DNA from: Schmidtea polychroa
Taxonomy: Eukaryota
DNA: 64,000 bases
Direction: 5' to 3'
Assembly (NCBI GenBank): GCA_044892525.1
Contig: CM097886.1
Location: 173,650,312 to 173,714,311 of the forward strand
Shown here piece after piece: positions 24,074-63,790 of the stretch (position 1 is its first letter; each line of letters opens with the position of its first letter). A program made the translations under genes and the position numbers. Below the pieces are notes generated by a model. The model worked only from the letters and a program-made list of their open reading frames with translations. It ran no database searches and was not told the DNA's origin.

Positions 24074-24235
24074 TCCGTAGTTGCCCAGGGAACGACTGTT
24101 GGAACGAATGGTGCCGTTGTACGACTAATAACTTCATCAAATAATATCTTTTAAAATGAACTACAAAAATTTTATTGCCAATGCATTCTGATTCCTCGAC
24201 TAAATAGAGTATTGTTTTTCAAAGACATAATTCAA

Positions 24236-24252
24236 GAATCCCACCCCGACGC
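24236..24252 (-). promoter_or_regulatory. Possible degenerate tRNA primer-binding site (Leu-like) of the Gypsy element
   Basis: Minus strand CGTCGGGGTGGGATTC is complementary to a tRNA-type 3' arm (GAATCCCACCCC), upstream of gag; the expected TGG start is absent. Confidence 0.3.
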
Positions 24253-24588
24253 GCGGACACGCATAAAAAAAATATTAATCAGTAGCTGCAGGCTCCCTGG
24301 TTAACACTAAATTATTATAAGTATATGCAAGCCCGCCTTGCTGTCATCCATTGTTATACTGGTGTTCAAAATTAGCATTCCACAAATTAAAATTTAATAT
24401 AAGATATAATTAATCACACATAAAAAACACCTGCAATAAATCTCATAAAAATAGCTTCCTAAAATAGATAATTGAAACATGAAATAGGTAGTCAGATATC
24501 GATCTGAGTCAACCCAGTCGTGTGTGGGTATTTCAATTTCTATTCTCAGCGTCATTAGCTGACTGGGAAAATACTGCATGTGGCATAT

Positions 24589-24667
24589 GTAAGTATGTAC
24601 TGGTGTGTATTAGTGCGTGTGACTTGTCTCGTATGTTCTCTCGTTATCTAACGTTAAAGTTTTACAG
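24589..24667 (+). other. Predicted 79-nt spliceosomal intron (recurs each unit)
   Basis: GTAAGT donor, CTAAC branch point at 24648-24652, TTTTACAG acceptor. Confidence 0.55.
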
Positions 24668-25279
24668 CTGATCATATTACACCGCGAGTTGGATTTAATT
24701 CGTTTAATCAATATGCTACCTATGATTATTTCTCATCGAACGTGGACATTGGATTTTATTCTCATGATGTGCAGTCTCTTTCGCTTTCTACCTGGATATT
24801 ATTATTTCGTGGATGTTTTCGGCAACTTATTCGAAAGATCTTCACCTGGACAATATTGGTCGAAGGTGTCTTTTACTGAAAGGACTTCATGTTACCGCTA
24901 TTGTAAATTTCAGGAGAAATGAAAACCGTTTGGTGAAAATTAAAGTGTTTATCGAAAAATGTCTTCGTATTAAAAATATGTTCAATAAATTTTCGTTTAT
25001 ACTCCCTATACTATTATTTAACATTTAACGAACATATTAGTACTCAGTTTCTCTATTGACGTGAATTTTGACAGAAGAGTGTTTTATCACCAGAAGATGG
25101 AGTGTCGGTTGATGCAAATAGACGATTACTGATGTCGGATGAAATTTCAGAGTGTGATGTCTAAGAAATAAGAATTTGTAGCCACCTCAGTCATTGTCAG
25201 TTAAGATTACTCTCCCTTTTCAACATTGAAATGTACTCCACTCTACTTTAAACTATTTCTTGCAGAATTTTATTACCTT

Positions 25280-25407
25280 CAGCGACGGACCCGTGAGGAA
25301 ACCCCCACATTCCGGCCCACGTCAGCTGCGTGATTGAAGAGATCCACACCCGCGGCTGAGCTCCCGAAGGCTCCTCACACCATGGCGTGGGTCTCCTCAA
25401 CTCCACG
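25280..25407 (-). ncRNA. Candidate 128-nt structured RNA: two abutting long hairpins, one capped by C(UUCG)G (recurs each unit)
   Basis: Hairpin 1 (25329-25407): UUGAGGAGACCCAC pairs with GUGGAUCUCUUCAA at 13 of 14 positions, apex CC-UUCG-GG. Hairpin 2 (25280-25328): CAGC/GCUG, GAC/GUC, GGGCC/GGUCC, GUGGGG/CCUCAC. G-U pairs favour the minus strand. Confidence 0.5.
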
Positions 25408-25861
25408 TTTCTCAAATATAATTTTATCATAATCAGTAGAGCTCGAAGATAAAAACATATCATAAATATTCATATACCATTAGTTTTTAAATTAAATCAT
25501 GAAACTGTATTAACATTAAAAAGTGAGATCGAATGAAGAAGTTTTATTAAATATGTTAAGTTAATGTAATCAAATATTTAATCCTTGAAAAACATTTACC
25601 AAATTTTACAATAACAACACATCCTTACTTATCGTTCGTAAATCGGTGATTCCAAAAGGCTGAGCCGAAAAAGCTAATCAAATCGGTTATAGAAATAGAT
25701 CGTCGATAGAATTGTTCCTAATAGTCGTCTGAGTGTCCGGTGATTGTCTGGATAGTCGAGTACCTGTAATTGGTTTGGTTTAACATTAACTATAGTGAGT
25801 TTGCTGTTTACTTATATATGCATTTTTCGTTTATGCGGACCAATCAGAATTGAGTACCGCT

Positions 25862-26090
25862 TAATTTTATTACTTTAATTTATTTTTCTTGTTTTTGAGT
25901 TATTTCTTCCTATTTTCTTTATTTTTATTGTGTTTTTATTTATTGTCCTATTTTAATTTTTCTTATTTTTATATTTTTTGTTTTAATTCTTATTTTCTAA
26001 TTATTGTTTTTTCTTATATTCTATTCTATTTTATTCGTCAATCTGTTTATTTTATTTTTATTTTACTTTAGTTATGTTTAACCTAATTTC
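25862..26090 (+). other. About 230-bp strongly T-biased tract (recurs each unit)
   Basis: Almost entirely T with scattered A on the plus strand; ends at a TTCTTAG acceptor-like site (26088-26094). Confidence 0.85.
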
Positions 26091-26093
26091 TTA

Positions 26094-26232
26094 GATACCC
26101 CTCGACTCAGCCCAACAAATCACTCGGGGACCCATCAAAATTGCGTCCCGGGATATATCCCCATAAATCTACCAAATAGCTGCCCGGATCTCAATGCGGT
26201 ATCATGACCACAACCCTTTAGGGTAATAGTAT
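26094..26232 (-). ncRNA. GC-rich island with Sm-like site between stem-loops (snRNA/SL-RNA-like candidate; alternatively a plus-strand non-coding exon)
   Basis: Minus strand: UGUGGU-CAUGAU-ACCGCA hairpin (26195-26212), palindrome GGGATATATCCC (26150-26161), AAUUUUGA (26135-26142), then a CCCCGA..UCGAGGGG-closed stem. Plus strand: acceptor at 26094 and G|GTAATA donor near 26223. Confidence 0.3.
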
Positions 26233-26962
26233 GAGGAGAAATAATTTACTGAAACAATTTATTAAAATAATTTATTAAAATAATTTGCTAATTTATTAAA
26301 GTTATTAAATTTATTTCAAACCCAAATCAAAGGAAGTCTAAATTTATTAATCACTAAAATTCTGACAAAATTATCAAATCGAAGGACGAAGAACTTAATA
26401 GTGAACTACATTCATTAATCCAATCACCCATATATTTGCATCATGGTTTCTTCGAATCACATTCATGCCAAAGTCCTGCGGGCACAGGTGATGAAATGTA
26501 TCCCCTGGGGTGGGAAAGCCTCTGGATGATTCCTTCAGTTTTTATTGGTTCAACGAGTGTGGCCGACTACTGATATTACTGAAATGTAATTAAAAATTTA
26601 CGATATCAATATTTAATATTTTCAATTGTTTACCTTATCACAGAAAAAAAATTACCAAAAGTACAAATTGATTTGAAATTCATTATTTATCATTAATTAT
26701 AATTATATCAACAAAACAACGAAAAAATTTAGATACTGTAAATGACTATAACAAAACAAAAAGTACTAAAAATCAAGGTTCCATGGCTTTATTCAAGTTA
26801 TTAGTTTTCAAATTTTTTCTATTAGATGAAAAATTTTTTTTCTTCTTAATTTAATTGATTAAAAATTATCGCTAAGTTAAATTCAATCTTCGTGTTAAAA
26901 GCACTCAACTTACTTACAGTAACATGTTATTTAGTTGAGATATTTTATCATAACTTCAATTT

Positions 26963-27005
26963 GTAAGTTATTGGTTGGGAACAGGTTGTAACATTTGTAC
27001 TGCAG
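26963..27005 (+). other. Predicted 43-nt 5' UTR intron immediately before the array ORF (recurs each unit)
   Basis: GTAAGT donor, TAAC branch-like motif, TACTGCAG acceptor two bases before ATG 27008. Confidence 0.5.
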
Positions 27006-27007
27006 AC

Positions 27008-27313
27008 ATGTCACAATCAAGCGACCACAGTGAAGAAGAGGTCCAACAAATGGTCACTCGACTCCGTACCCGGTACATTTGGTTCCACATCCGTCGGTGG
27101 AGCCAGGGACGGTACCTGGATAGCACTAATCGAGTTATTCGAAGTGGCCCCGAACCAGATGCCCCGGCGTGGGTGAAGATAGAACCGGCAAACAATGTAC
27201 TCCAGGAGGCCCGTGATCAAGCGGCTGGTGCCGTAGAGGCCGCCCAGGTGCGACTCAAGAAGATCGAGTTGCAAATCAGAGCAGAAAGGGAGGGTAGTCA
27301 GATATCGATCTGA
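27008..27313 (+). CDS. 101-aa orphan protein repeated once per unit (MSQSSDHSEEEVQQ...RLKKIELQIRAEREGSQISI)
   Basis: GC-rich ORF in an AT-rich unit with a helical C-terminus. Identical copies start at 27008, 29814, 32620, 35426, 38232, 41038, 43844, 46650, 49456, 52262, 55068, 57874. Confidence 0.5.
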   Translation: MSQSSDHSEEEVQQMVTRLRTRYIWFHIRRWSQGRYLDSTNRVIRSGPEPDAPAWVKIEPANNVLQEARDQAAGAVEAAQVRLKKIELQIRAEREGSQISI

Positions 27314-30300
27314 GTCAACCCAGTCGTGTGTGGGTATTTCAATTTCTATTCTCAGCGTCATTAGCTGACTGGGAAAATACTGCATGTGGCATATGTAAGT
27401 ATGTACTGGTGTGTATTAGTGCGTGTGACTTGTCTCGTATGTTCTCTCGTTATCTAACGTTAAAGTTTTACAGCTGATCATATTACACCGCGAGTTGGAT
27501 TTAATTCGTTTAATCAATATGCTACCTATGATTATTTCTCATCGAACGTGGACATTGGATTTTATTCTCATGATGTGCAGTCTCTTTCGCTTTCTACCTG
27601 GATATTATTATTTCGTGGATGTTTTCGGCAACTTATTCGAAAGATCTTCACCTGGACAATATTGGTCGAAGGTGTCTTTTACTGAAAGGACTTCATGTTA
27701 CCGCTATTGTAAATTTCAGGAGAAATGAAAACCGTTTGGTGAAAATTAAAGTGTTTATCGAAAAATGTCTTCGTATTAAAAATATGTTCAATAAATTTTC
27801 GTTTATACTCCCTATACTATTATTTAACATTTAACGAACATATTAGTACTCAGTTTCTCTATTGACGTGAATTTTGACAGAAGAGTGTTTTATCACCAGA
27901 AGATGGAGTGTCGGTTGATGCAAATAGACGATTACTGATGTCGGATGAAATTTCAGAGTGTGATGTCTAAGAAATAAGAATTTGTAGCCACCTCAGTCAT
28001 TGTCAGTTAAGATTACTCTCCCTTTTCAACATTGAAATGTACTCCACTCTACTTTAAACTATTTCTTGCAGAATTTTATTACCTTCAGCGACGGACCCGT
28101 GAGGAAACCCCCACATTCCGGCCCACGTCAGCTGCGTGATTGAAGAGATCCACACCCGCGGCTGAGCTCCCGAAGGCTCCTCACACCATGGCGTGGGTCT
28201 CCTCAACTCCACGTTTCTCAAATATAATTTTATCATAATCAGTAGAGCTCGAAGATAAAAACATATCATAAATATTCATATACCATTAGTTTTTAAATTA
28301 AATCATGAAACTGTATTAACATTAAAAAGTGAGATCGAATGAAGAAGTTTTATTAAATATGTTAAGTTAATGTAATCAAATATTTAATCCTTGAAAAACA
28401 TTTACCAAATTTTACAATAACAACACATCCTTACTTATCGTTCGTAAATCGGTGATTCCAAAAGGCTGAGCCGAAAAAGCTAATCAAATCGGTTATAGAA
28501 ATAGATCGTCGATAGAATTGTTCCTAATAGTCGTCTGAGTGTCCGGTGATTGTCTGGATAGTCGAGTACCTGTAATTGGTTTGGTTTAACATTAACTATA
28601 GTGAGTTTGCTGTTTACTTATATATGCATTTTTCGTTTATGCGGACCAATCAGAATTGAGTACCGCTTAATTTTATTACTTTAATTTATTTTTCTTGTTT
28701 TTGAGTTATTTCTTCCTATTTTCTTTATTTTTATTGTGTTTTTATTTATTGTCCTATTTTAATTTTTCTTATTTTTATATTTTTTGTTTTAATTCTTATT
28801 TTCTAATTATTGTTTTTTCTTATATTCTATTCTATTTTATTCGTCAATCTGTTTATTTTATTTTTATTTTACTTTAGTTATGTTTAACCTAATTTCTTAG
28901 ATACCCCTCGACTCAGCCCAACAAATCACTCGGGGACCCATCAAAATTGCGTCCCGGGATATATCCCCATAAATCTACCAAATAGCTGCCCGGATCTCAA
29001 TGCGGTATCATGACCACAACCCTTTAGGGTAATAGTATGAGGAGAAATAATTTACTGAAACAATTTATTAAAATAATTTATTAAAATAATTTGCTAATTT
29101 ATTAAAGTTATTAAATTTATTTCAAACCCAAATCAAAGGAAGTCTAAATTTATTAATCACTAAAATTCTGACAAAATTATCAAATCGAAGGACGAAGAAC
29201 TTAATAGTGAACTACATTCATTAATCCAATCACCCATATATTTGCATCATGGTTTCTTCGAATCACATTCATGCCAAAGTCCTGCGGGCACAGGTGATGA
29301 AATGTATCCCCTGGGGTGGGAAAGCCTCTGGATGATTCCTTCAGTTTTTATTGGTTCAACGAGTGTGGCCGACTACTGATATTACTGAAATGTAATTAAA
29401 AATTTACGATATCAATATTTAATATTTTCAATTGTTTACCTTATCACAGAAAAAAAATTACCAAAAGTACAAATTGATTTGAAATTCATTATTTATCATT
29501 AATTATAATTATATCAACAAAACAACGAAAAAATTTAGATACTGTAAATGACTATAACAAAACAAAAAGTACTAAAAATCAAGGTTCCATGGCTTTATTC
29601 AAGTTATTAGTTTTCAAATTTTTTCTATTAGATGAAAAATTTTTTTTCTTCTTAATTTAATTGATTAAAAATTATCGCTAAGTTAAATTCAATCTTCGTG
29701 TTAAAAGCACTCAACTTACTTACAGTAACATGTTATTTAGTTGAGATATTTTATCATAACTTCAATTTGTAAGTTATTGGTTGGGAACAGGTTGTAACAT
29801 TTGTACTGCAGACATGTCACAATCAAGCGACCACAGTGAAGAAGAGGTCCAACAAATGGTCACTCGACTCCGTACCCGGTACATTTGGTTCCACATCCGT
29901 CGGTGGAGCCAGGGACGGTACCTGGATAGCACTAATCGAGTTATTCGAAGTGGCCCCGAACCAGATGCCCCGGCGTGGGTGAAGATAGAACCGGCAAACA
30001 ATGTACTCCAGGAGGCCCGTGATCAAGCGGCTGGTGCCGTAGAGGCCGCCCAGGTGCGACTCAAGAAGATCGAGTTGCAAATCAGAGCAGAAAGGGAGGG
30101 TAGTCAGATATCGATCTGAGTCAACCCAGTCGTGTGTGGGTATTTCAATTTCTATTCTCAGCGTCATTAGCTGACTGGGAAAATACTGCATGTGGCATAT
30201 GTAAGTATGTACTGGTGTGTATTAGTGCGTGTGACTTGTCTCGTATGTTCTCTCGTTATCTAACGTTAAAGTTTTACAGCTGATCATATTACACCGCGAG

Positions 30301-33300
30301 TTGGATTTAATTCGTTTAATCAATATGCTACCTATGATTATTTCTCATCGAACGTGGACATTGGATTTTATTCTCATGATGTGCAGTCTCTTTCGCTTTC
30401 TACCTGGATATTATTATTTCGTGGATGTTTTCGGCAACTTATTCGAAAGATCTTCACCTGGACAATATTGGTCGAAGGTGTCTTTTACTGAAAGGACTTC
30501 ATGTTACCGCTATTGTAAATTTCAGGAGAAATGAAAACCGTTTGGTGAAAATTAAAGTGTTTATCGAAAAATGTCTTCGTATTAAAAATATGTTCAATAA
30601 ATTTTCGTTTATACTCCCTATACTATTATTTAACATTTAACGAACATATTAGTACTCAGTTTCTCTATTGACGTGAATTTTGACAGAAGAGTGTTTTATC
30701 ACCAGAAGATGGAGTGTCGGTTGATGCAAATAGACGATTACTGATGTCGGATGAAATTTCAGAGTGTGATGTCTAAGAAATAAGAATTTGTAGCCACCTC
30801 AGTCATTGTCAGTTAAGATTACTCTCCCTTTTCAACATTGAAATGTACTCCACTCTACTTTAAACTATTTCTTGCAGAATTTTATTACCTTCAGCGACGG
30901 ACCCGTGAGGAAACCCCCACATTCCGGCCCACGTCAGCTGCGTGATTGAAGAGATCCACACCCGCGGCTGAGCTCCCGAAGGCTCCTCACACCATGGCGT
31001 GGGTCTCCTCAACTCCACGTTTCTCAAATATAATTTTATCATAATCAGTAGAGCTCGAAGATAAAAACATATCATAAATATTCATATACCATTAGTTTTT
31101 AAATTAAATCATGAAACTGTATTAACATTAAAAAGTGAGATCGAATGAAGAAGTTTTATTAAATATGTTAAGTTAATGTAATCAAATATTTAATCCTTGA
31201 AAAACATTTACCAAATTTTACAATAACAACACATCCTTACTTATCGTTCGTAAATCGGTGATTCCAAAAGGCTGAGCCGAAAAAGCTAATCAAATCGGTT
31301 ATAGAAATAGATCGTCGATAGAATTGTTCCTAATAGTCGTCTGAGTGTCCGGTGATTGTCTGGATAGTCGAGTACCTGTAATTGGTTTGGTTTAACATTA
31401 ACTATAGTGAGTTTGCTGTTTACTTATATATGCATTTTTCGTTTATGCGGACCAATCAGAATTGAGTACCGCTTAATTTTATTACTTTAATTTATTTTTC
31501 TTGTTTTTGAGTTATTTCTTCCTATTTTCTTTATTTTTATTGTGTTTTTATTTATTGTCCTATTTTAATTTTTCTTATTTTTATATTTTTTGTTTTAATT
31601 CTTATTTTCTAATTATTGTTTTTTCTTATATTCTATTCTATTTTATTCGTCAATCTGTTTATTTTATTTTTATTTTACTTTAGTTATGTTTAACCTAATT
31701 TCTTAGATACCCCTCGACTCAGCCCAACAAATCACTCGGGGACCCATCAAAATTGCGTCCCGGGATATATCCCCATAAATCTACCAAATAGCTGCCCGGA
31801 TCTCAATGCGGTATCATGACCACAACCCTTTAGGGTAATAGTATGAGGAGAAATAATTTACTGAAACAATTTATTAAAATAATTTATTAAAATAATTTGC
31901 TAATTTATTAAAGTTATTAAATTTATTTCAAACCCAAATCAAAGGAAGTCTAAATTTATTAATCACTAAAATTCTGACAAAATTATCAAATCGAAGGACG
32001 AAGAACTTAATAGTGAACTACATTCATTAATCCAATCACCCATATATTTGCATCATGGTTTCTTCGAATCACATTCATGCCAAAGTCCTGCGGGCACAGG
32101 TGATGAAATGTATCCCCTGGGGTGGGAAAGCCTCTGGATGATTCCTTCAGTTTTTATTGGTTCAACGAGTGTGGCCGACTACTGATATTACTGAAATGTA
32201 ATTAAAAATTTACGATATCAATATTTAATATTTTCAATTGTTTACCTTATCACAGAAAAAAAATTACCAAAAGTACAAATTGATTTGAAATTCATTATTT
32301 ATCATTAATTATAATTATATCAACAAAACAACGAAAAAATTTAGATACTGTAAATGACTATAACAAAACAAAAAGTACTAAAAATCAAGGTTCCATGGCT
32401 TTATTCAAGTTATTAGTTTTCAAATTTTTTCTATTAGATGAAAAATTTTTTTTCTTCTTAATTTAATTGATTAAAAATTATCGCTAAGTTAAATTCAATC
32501 TTCGTGTTAAAAGCACTCAACTTACTTACAGTAACATGTTATTTAGTTGAGATATTTTATCATAACTTCAATTTGTAAGTTATTGGTTGGGAACAGGTTG
32601 TAACATTTGTACTGCAGACATGTCACAATCAAGCGACCACAGTGAAGAAGAGGTCCAACAAATGGTCACTCGACTCCGTACCCGGTACATTTGGTTCCAC
32701 ATCCGTCGGTGGAGCCAGGGACGGTACCTGGATAGCACTAATCGAGTTATTCGAAGTGGCCCCGAACCAGATGCCCCGGCGTGGGTGAAGATAGAACCGG
32801 CAAACAATGTACTCCAGGAGGCCCGTGATCAAGCGGCTGGTGCCGTAGAGGCCGCCCAGGTGCGACTCAAGAAGATCGAGTTGCAAATCAGAGCAGAAAG
32901 GGAGGGTAGTCAGATATCGATCTGAGTCAACCCAGTCGTGTGTGGGTATTTCAATTTCTATTCTCAGCGTCATTAGCTGACTGGGAAAATACTGCATGTG
33001 GCATATGTAAGTATGTACTGGTGTGTATTAGTGCGTGTGACTTGTCTCGTATGTTCTCTCGTTATCTAACGTTAAAGTTTTACAGCTGATCATATTACAC
33101 CGCGAGTTGGATTTAATTCGTTTAATCAATATGCTACCTATGATTATTTCTCATCGAACGTGGACATTGGATTTTATTCTCATGATGTGCAGTCTCTTTC
33201 GCTTTCTACCTGGATATTATTATTTCGTGGATGTTTTCGGCAACTTATTCGAAAGATCTTCACCTGGACAATATTGGTCGAAGGTGTCTTTTACTGAAAG

Positions 33301-36300
33301 GACTTCATGTTACCGCTATTGTAAATTTCAGGAGAAATGAAAACCGTTTGGTGAAAATTAAAGTGTTTATCGAAAAATGTCTTCGTATTAAAAATATGTT
33401 CAATAAATTTTCGTTTATACTCCCTATACTATTATTTAACATTTAACGAACATATTAGTACTCAGTTTCTCTATTGACGTGAATTTTGACAGAAGAGTGT
33501 TTTATCACCAGAAGATGGAGTGTCGGTTGATGCAAATAGACGATTACTGATGTCGGATGAAATTTCAGAGTGTGATGTCTAAGAAATAAGAATTTGTAGC
33601 CACCTCAGTCATTGTCAGTTAAGATTACTCTCCCTTTTCAACATTGAAATGTACTCCACTCTACTTTAAACTATTTCTTGCAGAATTTTATTACCTTCAG
33701 CGACGGACCCGTGAGGAAACCCCCACATTCCGGCCCACGTCAGCTGCGTGATTGAAGAGATCCACACCCGCGGCTGAGCTCCCGAAGGCTCCTCACACCA
33801 TGGCGTGGGTCTCCTCAACTCCACGTTTCTCAAATATAATTTTATCATAATCAGTAGAGCTCGAAGATAAAAACATATCATAAATATTCATATACCATTA
33901 GTTTTTAAATTAAATCATGAAACTGTATTAACATTAAAAAGTGAGATCGAATGAAGAAGTTTTATTAAATATGTTAAGTTAATGTAATCAAATATTTAAT
34001 CCTTGAAAAACATTTACCAAATTTTACAATAACAACACATCCTTACTTATCGTTCGTAAATCGGTGATTCCAAAAGGCTGAGCCGAAAAAGCTAATCAAA
34101 TCGGTTATAGAAATAGATCGTCGATAGAATTGTTCCTAATAGTCGTCTGAGTGTCCGGTGATTGTCTGGATAGTCGAGTACCTGTAATTGGTTTGGTTTA
34201 ACATTAACTATAGTGAGTTTGCTGTTTACTTATATATGCATTTTTCGTTTATGCGGACCAATCAGAATTGAGTACCGCTTAATTTTATTACTTTAATTTA
34301 TTTTTCTTGTTTTTGAGTTATTTCTTCCTATTTTCTTTATTTTTATTGTGTTTTTATTTATTGTCCTATTTTAATTTTTCTTATTTTTATATTTTTTGTT
34401 TTAATTCTTATTTTCTAATTATTGTTTTTTCTTATATTCTATTCTATTTTATTCGTCAATCTGTTTATTTTATTTTTATTTTACTTTAGTTATGTTTAAC
34501 CTAATTTCTTAGATACCCCTCGACTCAGCCCAACAAATCACTCGGGGACCCATCAAAATTGCGTCCCGGGATATATCCCCATAAATCTACCAAATAGCTG
34601 CCCGGATCTCAATGCGGTATCATGACCACAACCCTTTAGGGTAATAGTATGAGGAGAAATAATTTACTGAAACAATTTATTAAAATAATTTATTAAAATA
34701 ATTTGCTAATTTATTAAAGTTATTAAATTTATTTCAAACCCAAATCAAAGGAAGTCTAAATTTATTAATCACTAAAATTCTGACAAAATTATCAAATCGA
34801 AGGACGAAGAACTTAATAGTGAACTACATTCATTAATCCAATCACCCATATATTTGCATCATGGTTTCTTCGAATCACATTCATGCCAAAGTCCTGCGGG
34901 CACAGGTGATGAAATGTATCCCCTGGGGTGGGAAAGCCTCTGGATGATTCCTTCAGTTTTTATTGGTTCAACGAGTGTGGCCGACTACTGATATTACTGA
35001 AATGTAATTAAAAATTTACGATATCAATATTTAATATTTTCAATTGTTTACCTTATCACAGAAAAAAAATTACCAAAAGTACAAATTGATTTGAAATTCA
35101 TTATTTATCATTAATTATAATTATATCAACAAAACAACGAAAAAATTTAGATACTGTAAATGACTATAACAAAACAAAAAGTACTAAAAATCAAGGTTCC
35201 ATGGCTTTATTCAAGTTATTAGTTTTCAAATTTTTTCTATTAGATGAAAAATTTTTTTTCTTCTTAATTTAATTGATTAAAAATTATCGCTAAGTTAAAT
35301 TCAATCTTCGTGTTAAAAGCACTCAACTTACTTACAGTAACATGTTATTTAGTTGAGATATTTTATCATAACTTCAATTTGTAAGTTATTGGTTGGGAAC
35401 AGGTTGTAACATTTGTACTGCAGACATGTCACAATCAAGCGACCACAGTGAAGAAGAGGTCCAACAAATGGTCACTCGACTCCGTACCCGGTACATTTGG
35501 TTCCACATCCGTCGGTGGAGCCAGGGACGGTACCTGGATAGCACTAATCGAGTTATTCGAAGTGGCCCCGAACCAGATGCCCCGGCGTGGGTGAAGATAG
35601 AACCGGCAAACAATGTACTCCAGGAGGCCCGTGATCAAGCGGCTGGTGCCGTAGAGGCCGCCCAGGTGCGACTCAAGAAGATCGAGTTGCAAATCAGAGC
35701 AGAAAGGGAGGGTAGTCAGATATCGATCTGAGTCAACCCAGTCGTGTGTGGGTATTTCAATTTCTATTCTCAGCGTCATTAGCTGACTGGGAAAATACTG
35801 CATGTGGCATATGTAAGTATGTACTGGTGTGTATTAGTGCGTGTGACTTGTCTCGTATGTTCTCTCGTTATCTAACGTTAAAGTTTTACAGCTGATCATA
35901 TTACACCGCGAGTTGGATTTAATTCGTTTAATCAATATGCTACCTATGATTATTTCTCATCGAACGTGGACATTGGATTTTATTCTCATGATGTGCAGTC
36001 TCTTTCGCTTTCTACCTGGATATTATTATTTCGTGGATGTTTTCGGCAACTTATTCGAAAGATCTTCACCTGGACAATATTGGTCGAAGGTGTCTTTTAC
36101 TGAAAGGACTTCATGTTACCGCTATTGTAAATTTCAGGAGAAATGAAAACCGTTTGGTGAAAATTAAAGTGTTTATCGAAAAATGTCTTCGTATTAAAAA
36201 TATGTTCAATAAATTTTCGTTTATACTCCCTATACTATTATTTAACATTTAACGAACATATTAGTACTCAGTTTCTCTATTGACGTGAATTTTGACAGAA

Positions 36301-39300
36301 GAGTGTTTTATCACCAGAAGATGGAGTGTCGGTTGATGCAAATAGACGATTACTGATGTCGGATGAAATTTCAGAGTGTGATGTCTAAGAAATAAGAATT
36401 TGTAGCCACCTCAGTCATTGTCAGTTAAGATTACTCTCCCTTTTCAACATTGAAATGTACTCCACTCTACTTTAAACTATTTCTTGCAGAATTTTATTAC
36501 CTTCAGCGACGGACCCGTGAGGAAACCCCCACATTCCGGCCCACGTCAGCTGCGTGATTGAAGAGATCCACACCCGCGGCTGAGCTCCCGAAGGCTCCTC
36601 ACACCATGGCGTGGGTCTCCTCAACTCCACGTTTCTCAAATATAATTTTATCATAATCAGTAGAGCTCGAAGATAAAAACATATCATAAATATTCATATA
36701 CCATTAGTTTTTAAATTAAATCATGAAACTGTATTAACATTAAAAAGTGAGATCGAATGAAGAAGTTTTATTAAATATGTTAAGTTAATGTAATCAAATA
36801 TTTAATCCTTGAAAAACATTTACCAAATTTTACAATAACAACACATCCTTACTTATCGTTCGTAAATCGGTGATTCCAAAAGGCTGAGCCGAAAAAGCTA
36901 ATCAAATCGGTTATAGAAATAGATCGTCGATAGAATTGTTCCTAATAGTCGTCTGAGTGTCCGGTGATTGTCTGGATAGTCGAGTACCTGTTATTGGTTT
37001 GGTTTAACATTAACTATAGTGAGTTTGCTGTTTACTTATATATGCATTTTTCGTTTATGCGGACCAATCAGAATTGAGTACCGCTTAATTTTATTACTTT
37101 AATTTATTTTTCTTGTTTTTGAGTTATTTCTTCCTATTTTCTTTATTTTTATTGTGTTTTTATTTATTGTCCTATTTTAATTTTTCTTATTTTTATATTT
37201 TTTGTTTTAATTCTTATTTTCTAATTATTGTTTTTTCTTATATTCTATTCTATTTTATTCGTCAATCTGTTTATTTTATTTTTATTTTACTTTAGTTATG
37301 TTTAACCTAATTTCTTAGATACCCCTCGACTCAGCCCAACAAATCACTCGGGGACCCATCAAAATTGCGTCCCGGGATATATCCCCATAAATCTACCAAA
37401 TAGCTGCCCGGATCTCAATGCGGTATCATGACCACAACCCTTTAGGGTAATAGTATGAGGAGAAATAATTTACTGAAACAATTTATTAAAATAATTTATT
37501 AAAATAATTTGCTAATTTATTAAAGTTATTAAATTTATTTCAAACCCAAATCAAAGGAAGTCTAAATTTATTAATCACTAAAATTCTGACAAAATTATCA
37601 AATCGAAGGACGAAGAACTTAATAGTGAACTACATTCATTAATCCAATCACCCATATATTTGCATCATGGTTTCTTCGAATCACATTCATGCCAAAGTCC
37701 TGCGGGTACAGGTGATGAAATGTATCCCCTGGGGTGGGAAAGCCTCTGGATGATTCCTTCAGTTTTTATTGGTTCAACGAGTGTGGCCGACTACTGATAT
37801 TACTGAAATGTAATTAAAAATTTACGATATCAATATTTAATATTTTCAATTGTTTACCTTATCACAGAAAAAAAATTACCAAAAGTACAAATTGATTTGA
37901 AATTCATTATTTATCATTAATTATAATTATATCAACAAAACAACGAAAAAATTTAGATACTGTAAATGACTATAACAAAACAAAAAGTACTAAAAATCAA
38001 GGTTCCATGGCTTTATTCAAGTTATTAGTTTTCAAATTTTTTCTATTAGATGAAAAATTTTTTTTCTTCTTAATTTAATTGATTAAAAATTATCGCTAAG
38101 TTAAATTCAATCTTCGTGTTAAAAGCACTCAACTTACTTACAGTAACATGTTATTTAGTTGAGATATTTTATCATAACTTCAATTTGTAAGTTATTGGTT
38201 GGGAACAGGTTGTAACATTTGTACTGCAGACATGTCACAATCAAGCGACCACAGTGAAGAAGAGGTCCAACAAATGGTCACTCGACTCCGTACCCGGTAC
38301 ATTTGGTTCCACATCCGTCGGTGGAGCCAGGGACGGTACCTGGATAGCACTAATCGAGTTATTCGAAGTGGCCCCGAACCAGATGCCCCGGCGTGGGTGA
38401 AGATAGAACCGGCAAACAATGTACTCCAGGAGGCCCGTGATCAAGCGGCTGGTGCCGTAGAGGCCGCCCAGGTGCGACTCAAGAAGATCGAGTTGCAAAT
38501 CAGAGCAGAAAGGGAGGGTAGTCAGATATCGATCTGAGTCAACCCAGTCGTGTGTGGGTATTTCAATTTCTATTCTCAGCGTCATTAGCTGACTGGGAAA
38601 ATACTGCATGTGGCATATGTAAGTATGTACTGGTGTGTATTAGTGCGTGTGACTTGTCTCGTATGTTCTCTCGTTATCTAACGTTAAAGTTTTACAGCTG
38701 ATCATATTACACCGCGAGTTGGATTTAATTCGTTTAATCAATATGCTACCTATGATTATTTCTCATCGAACGTGGACATTGGATTTTATTCTCATGATGT
38801 GCAGTCTCTTTCGCTTTCTACCTGGATATTATTATTTCGTGGATGTTTTCGGCAACTTATTCGAAAGATCTTCACCTGGACAATATTGGTCGAAGGTGTC
38901 TTTTACTGAAAGGACTTCATGTTACCGCTATTGTAAATTTCAGGAGAAATGAAAACCGTTTGGTGAAAATTAAAGTGTTTATCGAAAAATGTCTTCGTAT
39001 TAAAAATATGTTCAATAAATTTTCGTTTATACTCCCTATACTATTATTTAACATTTAACGAACATATTAGTACTCAGTTTCTCTATTGACGTGAATTTTG
39101 ACAGAAGAGTGTTTTATCACCAGAAGATGGAGTGTCGGTTGATGCAAATAGACGATTACTGATGTCGGATGAAATTTCAGAGTGTGATGTCTAAGAAATA
39201 AGAATTTGTAGCCACCTCAGTCATTGTCAGTTAAGATTACTCTCCCTTTTCAACATTGAAATGTACTCCACTCTACTTTAAACTATTTCTTGCAGAATTT

Positions 39301-42300
39301 TATTACCTTCAGCGACGGACCCGTGAGGAAACCCCCACATTCCGGCCCACGTCAGCTGCGTGATTGAAGAGATCCACACCCGCGGCTGAGCTCCCGAAGG
39401 CTCCTCACACCATGGCGTGGGTCTCCTCAACTCCACGTTTCTCAAATATAATTTTATCATAATCAGTAGAGCTCGAAGATAAAAACATATCATAAATATT
39501 CATATACCATTAGTTTTTAAATTAAATCATGAAACTGTATTAACATTAAAAAGTGAGATCGAATGAAGAAGTTTTATTAAATATGTTAAGTTAATGTAAT
39601 CAAATATTTAATCCTTGAAAAACATTTACCAAATTTTACAATAACAACACATCCTTACTTATCGTTCGTAAATCGGTGATTCCAAAAGGCTGAGCCGAAA
39701 AAGCTAATCAAATCGGTTATAGAAATAGATCGTCGATAGAATTGTTCCTAATAGTCGTCTGAGTGTCCGGTGATTGTCTGGATAGTCGAGTACCTGTAAT
39801 TGGTTTGGTTTAACATTAACTATAGTGAGTTTGCTGTTTACTTATATATGCATTTTTCGTTTATGCGGACCAATCAGAATTGAGTACCGCTTAATTTTAT
39901 TACTTTAATTTATTTTTCTTGTTTTTGAGTTATTTCTTCCTATTTTCTTTATTTTTATTGTGTTTTTATTTATTGTCCTATTTTAATTTTTCTTATTTTT
40001 ATATTTTTTGTTTTAATTCTTATTTTCTAATTATTGTTTTTTCTTATATTCTATTCTATTTTATTCGTCAATCTGTTTATTTTATTTTTATTTTACTTTA
40101 GTTATGTTTAACCTAATTTCTTAGATACCCCTCGACTCAGCCCAACAAATCACTCGGGGACCCATCAAAATTGCGTCCCGGGATATATCCCCATAAATCT
40201 ACCAAATAGCTGCCCGGATCTCAATGCGGTATCATGACCACAACCCTTTAGGGTAATAGTATGAGGAGAAATAATTTACTGAAACAATTTATTAAAATAA
40301 TTTATTAAAATAATTTGCTAATTTATTAAAGTTATTAAATTTATTTCAAACCCAAATCAAAGGAAGTCTAAATTTATTAATCACTAAAATTCTGACAAAA
40401 TTATCAAATCGAAGGACGAAGAACTTAATAGTGAACTACATTCATTAATCCAATCACCCATATATTTGCATCATGGTTTCTTCGAATCACATTCATGCCA
40501 AAGTCCTGCGGGCACAGGTGATGAAATGTATCCCCTGGGGTGGGAAAGCCTCTGGATGATTCCTTCAGTTTTTATTGGTTCAACGAGTGTGGCCGACTAC
40601 TGATATTACTGAAATGTAATTAAAAATTTACGATATCAATATTTAATATTTTCAATTGTTTACCTTATCACAGAAAAAAAATTACCAAAAGTACAAATTG
40701 ATTTGAAATTCATTATTTATCATTAATTATAATTATATCAACAAAACAACGAAAAAATTTAGATACTGTAAATGACTATAACAAAACAAAAAGTACTAAA
40801 AATCAAGGTTCCATGGCTTTATTCAAGTTATTAGTTTTCAAATTTTTTCTATTAGATGAAAAATTTTTTTTCTTCTTAATTTAATTGATTAAAAATTATC
40901 GCTAAGTTAAATTCAATCTTCGTGTTAAAAGCACTCAACTTACTTACAGTAACATGTTATTTAGTTGAGATATTTTATCATAACTTCAATTTGTAAGTTA
41001 TTGGTTGGGAACAGGTTGTAACATTTGTACTGCAGACATGTCACAATCAAGCGACCACAGTGAAGAAGAGGTCCAACAAATGGTCACTCGACTCCGTACC
41101 CGGTACATTTGGTTCCACATCCGTCGGTGGAGCCAGGGACGGTACCTGGATAGCACTAATCGAGTTATTCGAAGTGGCCCCGAACCAGATGCCCCGGCGT
41201 GGGTGAAGATAGAACCGGCAAACAATGTACTCCAGGAGGCCCGTGATCAAGCGGCTGGTGCCGTAGAGGCCGCCCAGGTGCGACTCAAGAAGATCGAGTT
41301 GCAAATCAGAGCAGAAAGGGAGGGTAGTCAGATATCGATCTGAGTCAACCCAGTCGTGTGTGGGTATTTCAATTTCTATTCTCAGCGTCATTAGCTGACT
41401 GGGAAAATACTGCATGTGGCATATGTAAGTATGTACTGGTGTGTATTAGTGCGTGTGACTTGTCTCGTATGTTCTCTCGTTATCTAACGTTAAAGTTTTA
41501 CAGCTGATCATATTACACCGCGAGTTGGATTTAATTCGTTTAATCAATATGCTACCTATGATTATTTCTCATCGAACGTGGACATTGGATTTTATTCTCA
41601 TGATGTGCAGTCTCTTTCGCTTTCTACCTGGATATTATTATTTCGTGGATGTTTTCGGCAACTTATTCGAAAGATCTTCACCTGGACAATATTGGTCGAA
41701 GGTGTCTTTTACTGAAAGGACTTCATGTTACCGCTATTGTAAATTTCAGGAGAAATGAAAACCGTTTGGTGAAAATTAAAGTGTTTATCGAAAAATGTCT
41801 TCGTATTAAAAATATGTTCAATAAATTTTCGTTTATACTCCCTATACTATTATTTAACATTTAACGAACATATTAGTACTCAGTTTCTCTATTGACGTGA
41901 ATTTTGACAGAAGAGTGTTTTATCACCAGAAGATGGAGTGTCGGTTGATGCAAATAGACGATTACTGATGTCGGATGAAATTTCAGAGTGTGATGTCTAA
42001 GAAATAAGAATTTGTAGCCACCTCAGTCATTGTCAGTTAAGATTACTCTCCCTTTTCAACATTGAAATGTACTCCACTCTACTTTAAACTATTTCTTGCA
42101 GAATTTTATTACCTTCAGCGACGGACCCGTGAGGAAACCCCCACATTCCGGCCCACGTCAGCTGCGTGATTGAAGAGATCCACACCCGCGGCTGAGCTCC
42201 CGAAGGCTCCTCACACCATGGCGTGGGTCTCCTCAACTCCACGTTTCTCAAATATAATTTTATCATAATCAGTAGAGCTCGAAGATAAAAACATATCATA

Positions 42301-45300
42301 AATATTCATATACCATTAGTTTTTAAATTAAATCATGAAACTGTATTAACATTAAAAAGTGAGATCGAATGAAGAAGTTTTATTAAATATGTTAAGTTAA
42401 TGTAATCAAATATTTAATCCTTGAAAAACATTTACCAAATTTTACAATAACAACACATCCTTACTTATCGTTCGTAAATCGGTGATTCCAAAAGGCTGAG
42501 CCGAAAAAGCTAATCAAATCGGTTATAGAAATAGATCGTCGATAGAATTGTTCCTAATAGTCGTCTGAGTGTCCGGTGATTGTCTGGATAGTCGAGTACC
42601 TGTAATTGGTTTGGTTTAACATTAACTATAGTGAGTTTGCTGTTTACTTATATATGCATTTTTCGTTTATGCGGACCAATCAGAATTGAGTACCGCTTAA
42701 TTTTATTACTTTAATTTATTTTTCTTGTTTTTGAGTTATTTCTTCCTATTTTCTTTATTTTTATTGTGTTTTTATTTATTGTCCTATTTTAATTTTTCTT
42801 ATTTTTATATTTTTTGTTTTAATTCTTATTTTCTAATTATTGTTTTTTCTTATATTCTATTCTATTTTATTCGTCAATCTGTTTATTTTATTTTTATTTT
42901 ACTTTAGTTATGTTTAACCTAATTTCTTAGATACCCCTCGACTCAGCCCAACAAATCACTCGGGGACCCATCAAAATTGCGTCCCGGGATATATCCCCAT
43001 AAATCTACCAAATAGCTGCCCGGATCTCAATGCGGTATCATGACCACAACCCTTTAGGGTAATAGTATGAGGAGAAATAATTTACTGAAACAATTTATTA
43101 AAATAATTTATTAAAATAATTTGCTAATTTATTAAAGTTATTAAATTTATTTCAAACCCAAATCAAAGGAAGTCTAAATTTATTAATCACTAAAATTCTG
43201 ACAAAATTATCAAATCGAAGGACGAAGAACTTAATAGTGAACTACATTCATTAATCCAATCACCCATATATTTGCATCATGGTTTCTTCGAATCACATTC
43301 ATGCCAAAGTCCTGCGGGCACAGGTGATGAAATGTATCCCCTGGGGTGGGAAAGCCTCTGGATGATTCCTTCAGTTTTTATTGGTTCAACGAGTGTGGCC
43401 GACTACTGATATTACTGAAATGTAATTAAAAATTTACGATATCAATATTTAATATTTTCAATTGTTTACCTTATCACAGAAAAAAAATTACCAAAAGTAC
43501 AAATTGATTTGAAATTCATTATTTATCATTAATTATAATTATATCAACAAAACAACGAAAAAATTTAGATACTGTAAATGACTATAACAAAACAAAAAGT
43601 ACTAAAAATCAAGGTTCCATGGCTTTATTCAAGTTATTAGTTTTCAAATTTTTTCTATTAGATGAAAAATTTTTTTTCTTCTTAATTTAATTGATTAAAA
43701 ATTATCGCTAAGTTAAATTCAATCTTCGTGTTAAAAGCACTCAACTTACTTACAGTAACATGTTATTTAGTTGAGATATTTTATCATAACTTCAATTTGT
43801 AAGTTATTGGTTGGGAACAGGTTGTAACATTTGTACTGCAGACATGTCACAATCAAGCGACCACAGTGAAGAAGAGGTCCAACAAATGGTCACTCGACTC
43901 CGTACCCGGTACATTTGGTTCCACATCCGTCGGTGGAGCCAGGGACGGTACCTGGATAGCACTAATCGAGTTATTCGAAGTGGCCCCGAACCAGATGCCC
44001 CGGCGTGGGTGAAGATAGAACCGGCAAACAATGTACTCCAGGAGGCCCGTGATCAAGCGGCTGGTGCCGTAGAGGCCGCCCAGGTGCGACTCAAGAAGAT
44101 CGAGTTGCAAATCAGAGCAGAAAGGGAGGGTAGTCAGATATCGATCTGAGTCAACCCAGTCGTGTGTGGGTATTTCAATTTCTATTCTCAGCGTCATTAG
44201 CTGACTGGGAAAATACTGCATGTGGCATATGTAAGTATGTACTGGTGTGTATTAGTGCGTGTGACTTGTCTCGTATGTTCTCTCGTTATCTAACGTTAAA
44301 GTTTTACAGCTGATCATATTACACCGCGAGTTGGATTTAATTCGTTTAATCAATATGCTACCTATGATTATTTCTCATCGAACGTGGACATTGGATTTTA
44401 TTCTCATGATGTGCAGTCTCTTTCGCTTTCTACCTGGATATTATTATTTCGTGGATGTTTTCGGCAACTTATTCGAAAGATCTTCACCTGGACAATATTG
44501 GTCGAAGGTGTCTTTTACTGAAAGGACTTCATGTTACCGCTATTGTAAATTTCAGGAGAAATGAAAACCGTTTGGTGAAAATTAAAGTGTTTATCGAAAA
44601 ATGTCTTCGTATTAAAAATATGTTCAATAAATTTTCGTTTATACTCCCTATACTATTATTTAACATTTAACGAACATATTAGTACTCAGTTTCTCTATTG
44701 ACGTGAATTTTGACAGAAGAGTGTTTTATCACCAGAAGATGGAGTGTCGGTTGATGCAAATAGACGATTACTGATGTCGGATGAAATTTCAGAGTGTGAT
44801 GTCTAAGAAATAAGAATTTGTAGCCACCTCAGTCATTGTCAGTTAAGATTACTCTCCCTTTTCAACATTGAAATGTACTCCACTCTACTTTAAACTATTT
44901 CTTGCAGAATTTTATTACCTTCAGCGACGGACCCGTGAGGAAACCCCCACATTCCGGCCCACGTCAGCTGCGTGATTGAAGAGATCCACACCCGCGGCTG
45001 AGCTCCCGAAGGCTCCTCACACCATGGCGTGGGTCTCCTCAACTCCACGTTTCTCAAATATAATTTTATCATAATCAGTAGAGCTCGAAGATAAAAACAT
45101 ATCATAAATATTCATATACCATTAGTTTTTAAATTAAATCATGAAACTGTATTAACATTAAAAAGTGAGATCGAATGAAGAAGTTTTATTAAATATGTTA
45201 AGTTAATGTAATCAAATATTTAATCCTTGAAAAACATTTACCAAATTTTACAATAACAACACATCCTTACTTATCGTTCGTAAATCGGTGATTCCAAAAG

Positions 45301-60300: not shown

Positions 60301-60678
60301 TTACCTTATCACAGAAAAAAAATTACCAAAAGTACAAATTGATTTAAAATTCATTATTTATCATTAATTATAATTATATCAACAAAACAACGAAAAAATT
60401 TAGATACTGTAAATGACTATAACAAAACAAAAAGTACTAAAAATCAAGGTTCCATGGCTTTATTCAAGTTATTAGTTTTCAAATTTTTTCTATTAGATGA
60501 AAAATTTTTTTTCTTCTTAATTTAATTGATTAAAAATTATCGCTAAGTTAAATTCAATCTTCGTGTTAAAAGCACTCAACTTACTTACAGTAACATGTTA
60601 TTTAGTTGAGATATTTTATCATAACTTCAATTTGTAAGTTATTGGTTGGGAACAGGTTGTAACATTTGTACTGCAGAC

Positions 60679-63484: not shown

Positions 63485-63790
63485 ATGTCACAATCAAGCG
63501 ACCACAGTGAAGAAGAGGTCCAACAAATGGTCACTCGACTCCGTACCCGGTACATTTAGTTCCACATCCGTCGGTGGAGCCAGGGACGGTACCTGGATAG
63601 CACTAATCGAGTTATTCGAAGTGGCCCCGAACCAGATGCCCCGGCGTGGGTGAAGATAGAACCGGCAAACAATGTACTCCAGGAGGCCCGTGATCAAGCG
63701 GCTGGTGCCGTAGAGGCCGCCCAGGTGCGACTCAAGAAGATCGAGTTGCAAATCAGAGCAGAAAGGGAGGGTAGTCAGATATCGATCTGA
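63485..63790 (+). pseudogene. Array ORF copy 14 with premature stop (W25*)
   Basis: TGG to TAG at 63557-63559. Confidence 0.5.

What the first reader, a model, noticed from the sequence alone, without database searches (positions are those of the whole stretch)
25280..25407. 128-nt double-hairpin element with UUCG tetraloop, antisense to the ORF
Seen: two helices abut with no linker (possible coaxial stack); five G-U pairs work only on the minus strand versus one on plus; the apex is the extra-stable C(UUCG)G loop with a purine-rich GAG/AG internal loop below it. It lacks H/ACA boxes, SRP helix-8, U2 and U3 signatures. Inference: novel ncRNA or pre-miRNA-like hairpin. A minus-strand open frame also crosses it and ends at AG|GTAATA, so an exon reading is possible.
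Basis: partly seen in the sequence, partly recalled or inferred. Interest (0 to 1): 0.7.

Follow-up and report, generated by a model that had tools for sequence, protein, structure and literature searches.

The report
Conserved RNA double hairpin in retroelement LTR
The 128-base double hairpin is real and kept by selection, but it is not a separate RNA gene or an exon: it is a folded RNA module in the long terminal repeat of a giant planarian-type ("Burro"-like) retroelement, with hundreds of copies in the genome and an untested function.

Summary
Window 25280-25407, minus strand, folds into two abutting hairpins (-63.6 kcal/mol, z -3.3).

The stretch is not single-copy. It lies in a roughly 3.8-kb LTR (TG...CA ends, 4-bp target duplications) of a roughly 28-kb Ty3/gypsy-like element. 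The domain set of that element matches the published Burro/GYPSM1 elements of Schmidtea. The element's coding strand is the window's minus strand, so the hairpin is in sense on the element's own RNA.

At least 433 copies exist in the genome. Fourteen identical copies lie in this window, inside a 2806-bp tandem array.

Between divergent LTR subfamilies the hairpin is an isolated conserved island. Thirty distinct copies keep 99.2% of pair cells paired, and nine pairs changed on both sides. Many G-U pairs work only on the sense strand.

The exon reading is not supported: the GT is absent in several subfamilies, and an indel shifts the frame in this window's copies. The pre-miRNA reading is also not supported, because the stems vary while the apex is invariant. 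Rfam gives no match.

Best reading: an undescribed cis-acting structured RNA signal of the retroelement. Its function is untested; it is probably a protein-binding post-transcriptional or replication signal.

Other agents of this scan found different folded domains in the same LTRs.

The parts
25329..25407 (-). Helix 1 of the double hairpin. It has a long stem whose middle part covaries between subfamilies, an invariant apical part with an internal loop, and a C(UUCG)G apex (UUCG at 25368-25365). The window copies lack one base in the apical helix (GCC-GCGGG against GCCGG[C/T]GGG elsewhere).
25280..25328 (-). Helix 2 of the double hairpin, abutting helix 1 without a linker. It is nearly invariant. 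One base pair changed on both sides (C-G to U-A, with a U-G intermediate). A bulge changes position but always keeps a C to pair with the same G. The 5-nt internal loop reads G-N-A-A-(U/A).
24124..26117 (-). Fragment of the retroelement LTR: its first ~2 kb in sense orientation. The LTR starts TGTTGGGCTGAG at 26117 and is truncated at 24124. The hairpin lies about 710-840 nt into this copy, which corresponds to 809-948 of the 3768-nt copy L013:2206-5973.
26118..27292 (-). Sequence upstream of the LTR in sense orientation. The 33 nt next to the LTR are identical to the end of the internal region of a full-length element. The rest is a dispersed repeat in its own right and carries a 262-nt deletion relative to other copies. 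It is presumably the 3' end of the internal region of this subfamily.
24487..64000 (-). Tandem array of 2806-bp units (99.9-100% identical). Each unit holds the sequence above plus the first ~1630 nt of the LTR. The array runs beyond the window to about G000:C2:173733814, roughly 22 units. Hairpin copies start at 25280, 28086, 30892, 33698, 36504, 39310, 42116, 44922, 47728, 50534, 53340, 56146, 58952 and 61757.

Best explanation
The double hairpin is a cis-acting, base-paired RNA domain of a giant Ty3/gypsy-like (Burro-like) LTR retroelement. It is read on the element's own sense-strand RNA. Five points are shown. (1) It sits in the LTR. (2) It is in sense with gag-pol. (3) It is the only conserved island for more than 1 kb between divergent LTR subfamilies. 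(4) Its stems are kept by compensatory changes. (5) Its G-U pairs work only on the sense strand. The rest is inferred. Every LTR position is part of the full-length RNA, either in U3-R at the 3' end or in R-U5 at the 5' end, so the domain is carried by the genomic RNA. The lower stem varies but stays paired, while the apex, internal loops and helix 2 are invariant. That pattern is typical of a platform that presents fixed nucleotides to a protein. I think it most likely lies in U3, that is in the 3' untranslated part of all element transcripts, upstream of the conserved LTR-borne ORF. There it would act as a post-transcriptional signal (nuclear export, stability or translation of the very long unspliced RNA), or less likely as a packaging or strand-transfer signal.
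For: LTR identity: sharp ends TG...CA, 4-bp target duplications in 6 of 8 copies examined, and more than 1700 first-look candidates. A full-length element has two LTRs 99.66% alike, a PBS 8 nt after the 5' LTR, and ORFs on the strand that equals the window's minus strand. Those ORFs hold gag, CCHC, a mononegavirus-type fusion glycoprotein in front of PR-RT-RNase H, IN, ankyrin and RING/MATH domains. This domain set is the one published for Burro/GYPSM1 (PMC6431247), and BURRO1 is transcribed (PMC8532177). Conserved island: between distant subfamilies only LTR 1-417, 809-948 (the hairpin), 2479-3203 (the ORF) and 3501-3768 align. Structure: 48 pairs, 9 changed on both sides, 99.2% of cells paired, covariation above all 500 shuffles and all slid controls. 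Every variant folds alike. 433 copies match the helix-2 pattern exactly, on both strands alike. The precedents for a structured element beside an accessory ORF in U3 come from my own knowledge of retroviruses, not from a test here.
Against: No transcript ends are known, so U3 versus R or U5 is unresolved. The public runs were only assembled contigs of uncertain kind and showed nothing beyond presence. No binding protein or function has been tested. Covariation was counted on paralogous copies within one genome, which share ancestry. At least four or five separate lineages carry different compensated stems, but this is not a phylogeny-corrected test. Reverse-transcription functions such as template switching or dimerisation would give the same sequence pattern.
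Confidence: 0.5

Rival explanations
1. R-region double hairpin. Transcription starts just upstream of helix 1 and polyadenylation in the 3' LTR occurs just downstream. The two hairpins would then form R, comparable to TAR plus the poly(A) hairpin of HIV-1, and serve first-strand transfer. U5 would be about 2.8 kb long and would carry the LTR ORF.
For: An AT-rich TTATGA-like box lies 14-17 nt upstream of the conserved GAG(G/A)AACGUGG in most subfamilies. A TAAA(A)-type hexamer (AATAAA, ATTAAA, AGTAAA, ACTAAA...) follows the hairpin within about 10 nt. R regions are usually the best conserved and most structured part of an LTR (own knowledge).
Against: The flanks are about 75% A+T, so such boxes are expected by chance. 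A U5 of 2.8 kb with a conserved ORF has no precedent that I know of. No poly(A)-tailed retrocopies end after the hairpin. One contig of a possibly-RNA run reads 89 nt past the hairpin into genomic LTR sequence. A separate conserved block with a GTAAGT at LTR ~3495 and a folded U5-like domain sits at the far end of the LTR (earlier notes s1-237142 and s1-240842).
Confidence: 0.15
2. Reverse-transcription helper. The apical 3' strand of helix 1 resembles the primer-binding site. It could bind the primer tRNA, or pair with tRNA-like or PBS sequences, to bridge the genome ends. This would be comparable to the bipartite PBS of yeast Ty3 or the tRNA-like segment in HIV-1 U3-R.
For: GGG(A/U)GCUCAGCCGG in the hairpin matches GGGGGCUCAGCCGG of the invariant PBS at 13 of 14 positions. 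It is the best PBS-like match in the whole LTR.
Against: Over the 18-nt PBS the match is 13 of 18, and 60 of 1000 local-composition shuffles reach it. The core GGCUCAGCC is nearly palindromic. The segment is itself paired inside helix 1. The primer tRNA gene was not found, because the patterns hit only PBS sites of other LTR families.
Confidence: 0.07
3. Small-RNA precursor: a pre-miRNA-like hairpin, or a two-hairpin 'dumbbell' like the Pol III-transcribed precursors in the U3 of foamy viruses.
For: Size (128 nt), two hairpins, and location in a long LTR of an element with accessory genes. The resemblance is recalled from my own knowledge.
Against: The conservation pattern is the reverse of a miRNA's: the arms vary and the apex is invariant. 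Helix 2 is only a 49-nt hairpin. No run of four or more T follows in any subfamily within about 90 nt. No Rfam miRNA family matches.
Confidence: 0.06
4. Exon of a spliced LTR transcript, either a leader exon or a coding exon, ending at AG|GT.
For: AAG|GT is present in the window subfamily and several others, and one frame is open across the hairpin. Other first readers of this scan proposed that such LTRs are spliced transcription units (unchecked notes).
Against: GT is absent at that place in at least five subfamily types (GGG, GGA, GAT). Where present, the intron side varies (GTAATA, GTGTGA, GTGCGA, GTCACT). In most copies the open frame ends at the conserved TGA inside helix 2, and the window's frame results from a 1-nt deletion. 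All codon positions are equally conserved, and changes are pairwise in stems. No joint was seen at the hairpin end.
Confidence: 0.04
5. No RNA function: a GC-rich DNA element (for example a protein-binding site), or a captured fragment of a host RNA gene that happens to fold.
For: It is a GC-rich island in A+T-rich DNA. Part of the apex resembles a tRNA D-arm or box A.
Against: Compensatory changes and strand-specific G-U pairs are not expected for a DNA site. No Rfam family matches. All copies examined sit in the same LTR context.
Confidence: 0.05

Closest known systems
Burro / GYPSM1 giant gypsy-like LTR retrotransposons of Schmidtea mediterranea (Grohme et al. 2018; Jurka 2007; reviewed in PMC6431247)
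   Same: Element size is about 28 kb with multi-kb LTRs and thousands of copies. It has gag with CCHC knuckles, an env-like fusion glycoprotein of mononegavirus type lying between gag and pol, PR-RT-RH-IN, ankyrin repeats and RING plus MATH/TRAF domains. The genome is A+T-rich, 781 Mb, with four large chromosomes.
   Different: The papers read here describe the proteins, not folded RNA domains of the LTR. I could not compare with the deposited Burro sequences, so assignment to a named Burro family is by description only.
Structured cis-acting RNA elements in the 3' part or LTR of retroviruses (MPMV CTE, HTLV RxRE, HERV-K RcRE, MMTV RmRE)
   Same: These are discrete folded domains of 100-500 nt on the sense RNA. 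Their stems are kept by pairing and their loops are invariant. They lie near or in U3 of elements that carry accessory genes. This is functional analogy only, from my own knowledge.
   Different: There is no sequence or Rfam similarity. No export factor or element-encoded adaptor is known here, and the position relative to U3/R/U5 is not established.
HIV-1 R region (TAR plus poly(A) hairpins) and the SNV/REV-A post-transcriptional control element (two stem-loops in R-U5)
   Same: Two adjacent stable hairpins of about 100-165 nt in an LTR.
   Different: Those lie at the 5' end of the transcript. Here the transcription start is unknown, and the hairpin is about 0.8 kb from the LTR start and about 2.8 kb from its end.
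Other folded LTR domains of the same elements found in this scan (about 250-nt multi-hairpin domain at the U5 end)
   Same: Same element family, same kind of evidence (covariation between subfamilies).
   Different: They occupy a different place in the LTR (the last ~270 nt, next to the PBS) and have a different fold. I did not test them beyond seeing the conserved block at LTR 3501-3768.

Membership tests
LTR retrotransposon, Ty3/gypsy-like (Burro-like) | Terminal repeats with TG...CA ends and short target-site duplications | tested here: met
   Ends are TGTTGGG...CCCAGCA in sense orientation. 4-bp duplications (TTAA, CAGC, GTTT, GATA, ATAT) flank solo copies and a full-length copy.
LTR retrotransposon, Ty3/gypsy-like (Burro-like) | Two LTRs flanking gag and pol in the order PR-RT-RH-IN, with a PBS after the 5' LTR | tested here: met
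   One search gives the LTR pair, another the Pfam domains, and the PBS TGGGGGCTCAGCCGGGA 8 nt after the LTR.
LTR retrotransposon, Ty3/gypsy-like (Burro-like) | Burro-specific accessory domains (env-like module between gag and pol, ankyrin, RING, MATH/TRAF) | tested here: met
   One search compared with the description in PMC6431247. No sequence comparison with the deposited Burro elements was possible.
pre-miRNA / viral dumbbell miRNA precursor | Mature-arm sequence conserved, loop free to vary | tested here: not met
   The arms of helix 1 vary and covary. The apex and loops are invariant.
pre-miRNA / viral dumbbell miRNA precursor | Pol III terminator (T run) after the hairpins; discrete small RNAs | tested here: not met
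   No run of four or more T within about 90 nt downstream in any subfamily. Small-RNA reads could not be examined.
Known RNA families (Rfam 15), including self-cleaving ribozymes, snRNA, snoRNA, SRP, tRNA | Covariance-model match | tested here: not met
   No hit at gathering score in the window. Only chance-level hits (E 4-9) appear at 25000-25700.
Spliced exon | Conserved splice sites and, if coding, a conserved frame with third-position variation | tested here: not met
   GT is lacking in several subfamilies. An indel shifts the frame in the window copies. Conservation is even across codon positions. No joint was seen in the laid contigs.
R-region hairpins (TAR / poly(A)-like) | Transcript starts at the 5' hairpin; poly(A) site just downstream in the 3' LTR | not testable with these tools
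   Only assembled contigs were available, and these cannot show RNA ends. Motif evidence is inconclusive.
Retroviral export / post-transcriptional elements (CTE, RRE-like) | Binding of an export factor or element-encoded adaptor; dependence of unspliced RNA export on the element | not testable with these tools
   Only the conservation pattern is compatible: a variable paired stem with invariant loops.

The most novel reading that the evidence does not exclude
The double hairpin is the response element of a Rev/Rex-like system. An element-encoded protein, for instance the conserved 266-aa ORF carried in the same LTR or one of the accessory ORFs, would bind it to export or stabilise the ~25-kb unspliced RNA. 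That would make Burro-like elements the first invertebrate LTR retroelements with a 'complex retrovirus' type of post-transcriptional control.
Probability: 0.1. Interest if true: 0.75.

Novelty: new member of a known kind. Interest (0 to 1): 0.45.

Why it matters
Burro-like elements are among the largest LTR retroelements known. They fill a large share of planarian genomes and are transcribed in differentiated tissues when PIWI control is lost (PMC8532177). How a ~25-kb RNA with many reading frames is exported, translated, packaged and copied is unknown. This discrete folded module of 128 nt, supported by covariation and conserved across all subfamilies examined, gives a concrete handle for that question. 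It can be probed, mutated with compensating changes, and used as bait for binding proteins. For genome annotation, it shows that this GC-rich hairpin, which recurs hundreds of times, should be masked as LTR sequence. It should not be called an ncRNA gene, a miRNA or an exon.

Tried and rejected
1. Rfam, at gathering score on the whole window and at E up to 10 on 25000-25700, gave nothing meaningful.

2. RNA evidence. The first request to the look-up of sequencing runs did not complete. Laying four runs on a 5' LTR of the window's subfamily (L017:1-6000) showed presence only. The depth peak over the hairpin coincides with the blocks conserved between subfamilies, so it says nothing about RNA level. 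No GT-AG joint was seen at the hairpin. This leaves the question of transcription open.

3. Primer tRNA. Two pattern searches for a tRNA 3' end complementary to the PBS hit only PBS sites of other LTR families, and ARAGORN found no tRNA there. I dropped this line.

4. PBS mimicry of the apex is not significant (p about 0.06). Complementarity between the apex (CCUUCG...CUCAGCC) and the LTR start (GGCUGAG.CGAAGG) is not kept in the subfamily whose LTR starts ...CGAAAGC, so I treat it as chance.

5. Poly(A)-tailed retrocopies ending after the hairpin: none. This is uninformative.

6. A first copy-number pattern had a wrong gap and found nothing. The corrected pattern found 433 copies.

7. Search outside the genome. 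Viral contigs gave none. The one metagenome hit is a chance 21-mer in a GC-rich bacterial gene.

8. I built no covariance model, because a search of the genome would only return the best-scoring near-identical copies.

Full report
**Observation.** The minus strand of window 25280-25407 folds into two hairpins that abut without a linker. Helix 1 is 25407-25329 and helix 2 is 25328-25280. The apex is C(UUCG)G, with UUCG at 25368-25365, and a purine-rich internal loop lies below it. MFE is -63.6 kcal/mol against -50.4 +/- 4.0 for dinucleotide shuffles (z -3.28, 2 of 200 as good). The plus strand folds less well (-45.9 kcal/mol, z -2.24). The stretch is a 65%-GC island in DNA of about 33% GC. Rfam has no match, either at gathering score over the window or at E up to 10 around the site.

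**It is a repeat.** A search of the window's own genome (781 Mb; four large chromosomes) with 25250-25440 gave 1727 first-look candidates. The 40 that were scored are 95-100% identical and lie on all four chromosomes. Within the window the stretch recurs every 2806 bp. A tandem array of units 99.9-100% identical runs from 24487 to the window's end. The array holds 14 identical hairpin copies in the window and about 22 units in all.

**The repeat is an LTR.** Ten dispersed copies fetched with flanks define an element of about 3768 bp. Its ends are sharp, TGTTGGGCTGAG...CTACCCCAGCA in the orientation of the window's minus strand. 4-bp target duplications of varied sequence flank 6 of the 8 copies examined at both ends; one of the other two is a 5' LTR followed by a PBS. 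There is no internal terminal repeat. These are the marks of solo LTRs.

**A full-length element fixes the orientation.** Two copies 24 kb apart on chromosome 1 are the LTRs of a full-length element. The two LTRs are 99.66% identical and are flanked by an ATAT duplication. A primer-binding site, TGGGGGCTCAGCCGGGA, lies 8 nt after the 5' LTR. The 20-kb internal part carries a series of domains on one strand:
- a RING-finger ORF;
- Retrotrans_gag and CCHC knuckles;
- a Monjiviricetes-type fusion glycoprotein (E 6e-50) in the same frame as PR-RT-RNase H;
- integrase;
- an ankyrin-repeat ORF;
- a RING plus MATH/TRAF ORF.

This is the domain set described for the giant Burro/GYPSM1 gypsy-like elements of the planarian Schmidtea mediterranea, including the unusual env module between gag and pol (PMC6431247). 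That inference was not checked against a named assembly.

The coding strand of the element is the window's minus strand. The hairpin is therefore in sense with the element, not 'antisense to the ORF'. The plus-strand ORFs at the site are only 32-35 aa.

**What the window holds.** 26117 down to 24124 is the first ~2 kb of an LTR in sense orientation. The 33 nt before it (26118-26150) are identical to the end of the internal region of the full-length copy. The remainder, up to 27292, is itself a dispersed repeat and carries a 262-nt deletion relative to other copies. The 2806-bp unit thus consists of the end of an internal region plus the first ~1630 nt of a 3' LTR, amplified in tandem. The join is blunt and shows no homology.

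**Conservation.** I compared LTRs of divergent subfamilies, taken from fourteen 5' LTRs found through their PBS junction. Only four blocks align with the window's type:
- LTR 1-417;
- LTR 809-948, which is exactly the double hairpin;
- LTR 2479-3203, a conserved ORF carried in the LTR, 66-67% identical;
- LTR 3501-3768.

The hairpin's flanks are unalignable between distant subfamilies. Further subfamilies were collected with a divergent copy as query. A pattern built on two invariant stretches of helix 2 matches 433 places, 209 forward and 224 reverse. Many of these lie in pairs 22-30 kb apart, the spacing expected of the two LTRs of a full-length element.

**Structure under selection.** Thirty distinct copies were aligned (A1).
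- The middle of helix 1 occurs in at least five compensated versions: GAGGAGA.CCACGCC/GGUGUGG.UCUCUUC, ...CUGUACC/GGUACAG..., GAGACGUUCCACACC/GGUGUGGGACGUUUC, ...CCAUACC/GGUAUGG..., and GAGACAUUUCAUACC/GGUAUGAAAUGUUUC.
- At the base of helix 2, C-G became U-A in two copies, and one copy shows the U-G intermediate.
- A bulge in helix 2 changes register (CGU, UUC, CUU, AUC), but a C is always available to pair with the same G.

Overall 99.2% of pair cells are standard pairs, against 37-47% when the 3' partners are slid by 1-3 columns. The covariation score is 0.162 against 0.094 +/- 0.005 in 500 shuffles, none of which reaches it. Invariant or frequent G-U pairs at seven or more positions would be A-C mismatches on the other strand. 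The constraint therefore acts on the sense-strand RNA. Six subfamily variants fold into the same shape on their own, z -1.6 to -5.9.

One caveat applies. The copies are paralogues within one genome, so the shuffle control overstates independence. The slid controls and the number of distinct compensated versions are the stronger argument.

**Readings rejected.**
- *Exon.* The GT of AG|GTAATA is replaced by GG, GA or AT in at least five subfamily types, among them the full-length copy with near-identical LTRs. Where GT is present, the following bases vary. In most copies the one open frame ends at the conserved TGA within helix 2. All codon positions are equally conserved, and the changes come in stem pairs. 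No joint starts at the hairpin end in the contigs laid on a 5' LTR.
- *pre-miRNA or dumbbell precursor.* The arms vary and the apex is invariant, which is the reverse of a miRNA. No T-run terminator follows the hairpins.
- *Known ncRNA or ribozyme.* Rfam gives no match.
- *PBS mimic.* The apex shares 13 of 14 bases with the PBS, but 6% of local shuffles of the LTR do as well over the 18-mer.

**Function.** Every LTR base is part of the element's full-length RNA, either in U3-R at the 3' end or in R-U5 at the 5' end. The domain is therefore carried by the genomic RNA, and BURRO1 RNA is detectable in planarian tissues (PMC8532177). Where transcription starts is unknown. The public runs available were assembled contigs of uncertain kind and cannot show RNA ends. 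Their depth peaks simply mirror the blocks shared by many subfamilies.

I favour a position in U3, that is in the 3' untranslated part of all element RNAs, for three reasons. First, a conserved ORF lies downstream in the same LTR. ORFs in U3 have retroviral precedents, whereas I know of none in U5. Second, the last 268 nt of the LTR form a separate conserved block next to the PBS, beginning with a conserved GTAAGT. Other agents of this scan read that block as a folded U5 leader. Third, the pattern of a variable but paired stem presenting invariant loops is that of a protein-binding platform, like the export and post-transcriptional elements of retroviruses.

This is inference. The R-region alternative remains open: a TATA-like box about 20 nt upstream and an AAUAAA-like hexamer about 10 nt downstream. 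It could be settled by mapping RNA ends.

**Novelty.** Neither the papers read here nor Rfam describe this domain. It is an undescribed member of a familiar kind, the cis-acting folded RNA elements of retroelement LTRs, in an unusual host element.

Copies were only compared.

Noticed in passing
window 24487-64000 and on to about G000:C2:173733814: A tandem array of about 22 units of 2806 bp, 99.9-100% identical. Each unit holds the end of a retroelement's internal region plus the first ~1630 nt of its 3' LTR. The units join bluntly with no homology at the junction (27292|27293 = 24487). One unit downstream of the window is 46 bp longer.
   Followed up: partly
window 25343-25344 (minus-strand GCC-GCGGG) and all 14 copies in the window: The array's hairpin copies lack one base of the apical helix that almost all other copies have (GCCGG[C/T]GGG). 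This removes one U-G pair and shifts the reading frame across the hairpin.
   Followed up: yes
window 25180-25200 (minus strand), about 80-95 nt downstream of the hairpin; same place in L021, L027, L031, L040, L044, L055: A second short motif is conserved across subfamilies in otherwise diverged sequence: (A/G)UGA(C/U)UGAG(G/C)..., for example AAUGACUGAGGUGGCUACAAA. Whether it pairs with anything was not worked out.
   Followed up: no
L013:2206-5973 (LTR, sense = minus strand); L021:3845-4642: The LTR carries a conserved open frame of up to 266 codons (starting MLPSSKPSLKP..., with a coiled-coil-like basic stretch) at LTR ~2411-3208. It has no Pfam match and is 66-67% identical in DNA between distant subfamilies. 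It lies outside the window's truncated LTR copies.
   Followed up: partly
L017, L021, L027, L030-L032, L036: last ~270 nt of the LTR: The conserved 3' block of the LTR begins sharply at AGACGTAAGTCC. This contains a perfect GTAAGT and so may be the major splice donor of the leader. The block is GC-rich up to the PBS.
   Followed up: no
G000:C1:130901010-130944748 and about 2275 places genome-wide: The same primer-binding sequence (reverse complement TTCAAATCCCGGCTGAGCCCCCA) is used by other LTR families. One occurs as a long tandem array with a 475-bp period on chromosome 1. ARAGORN finds no tRNA gene at the sampled places.
   Followed up: partly
L031:596-631 and L036 (minus strand) next to the LTR start: Some LTRs that are followed by a PBS are also preceded by the end of an internal region (…GATGGGTCCCCGAGTGATT|TGTTGGG). 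Elements therefore also occur head to tail sharing one LTR.
   Followed up: no
L055:1-459 compared with L048 and with the window type: This is a mosaic LTR. The sequence upstream of the hairpin and the helix-1 version are those of one subfamily (as in L048). The sequence downstream of the hairpin is that of the window/L021 type. This suggests recombination or template switching at the conserved hairpin.
   Followed up: no
L066:205-225: The only match to the invariant helix-2 21-mer in the metagenome collection lies in a GC-rich bacterial-looking coding region with no hairpin. It is a chance hit.
   Followed up: yes
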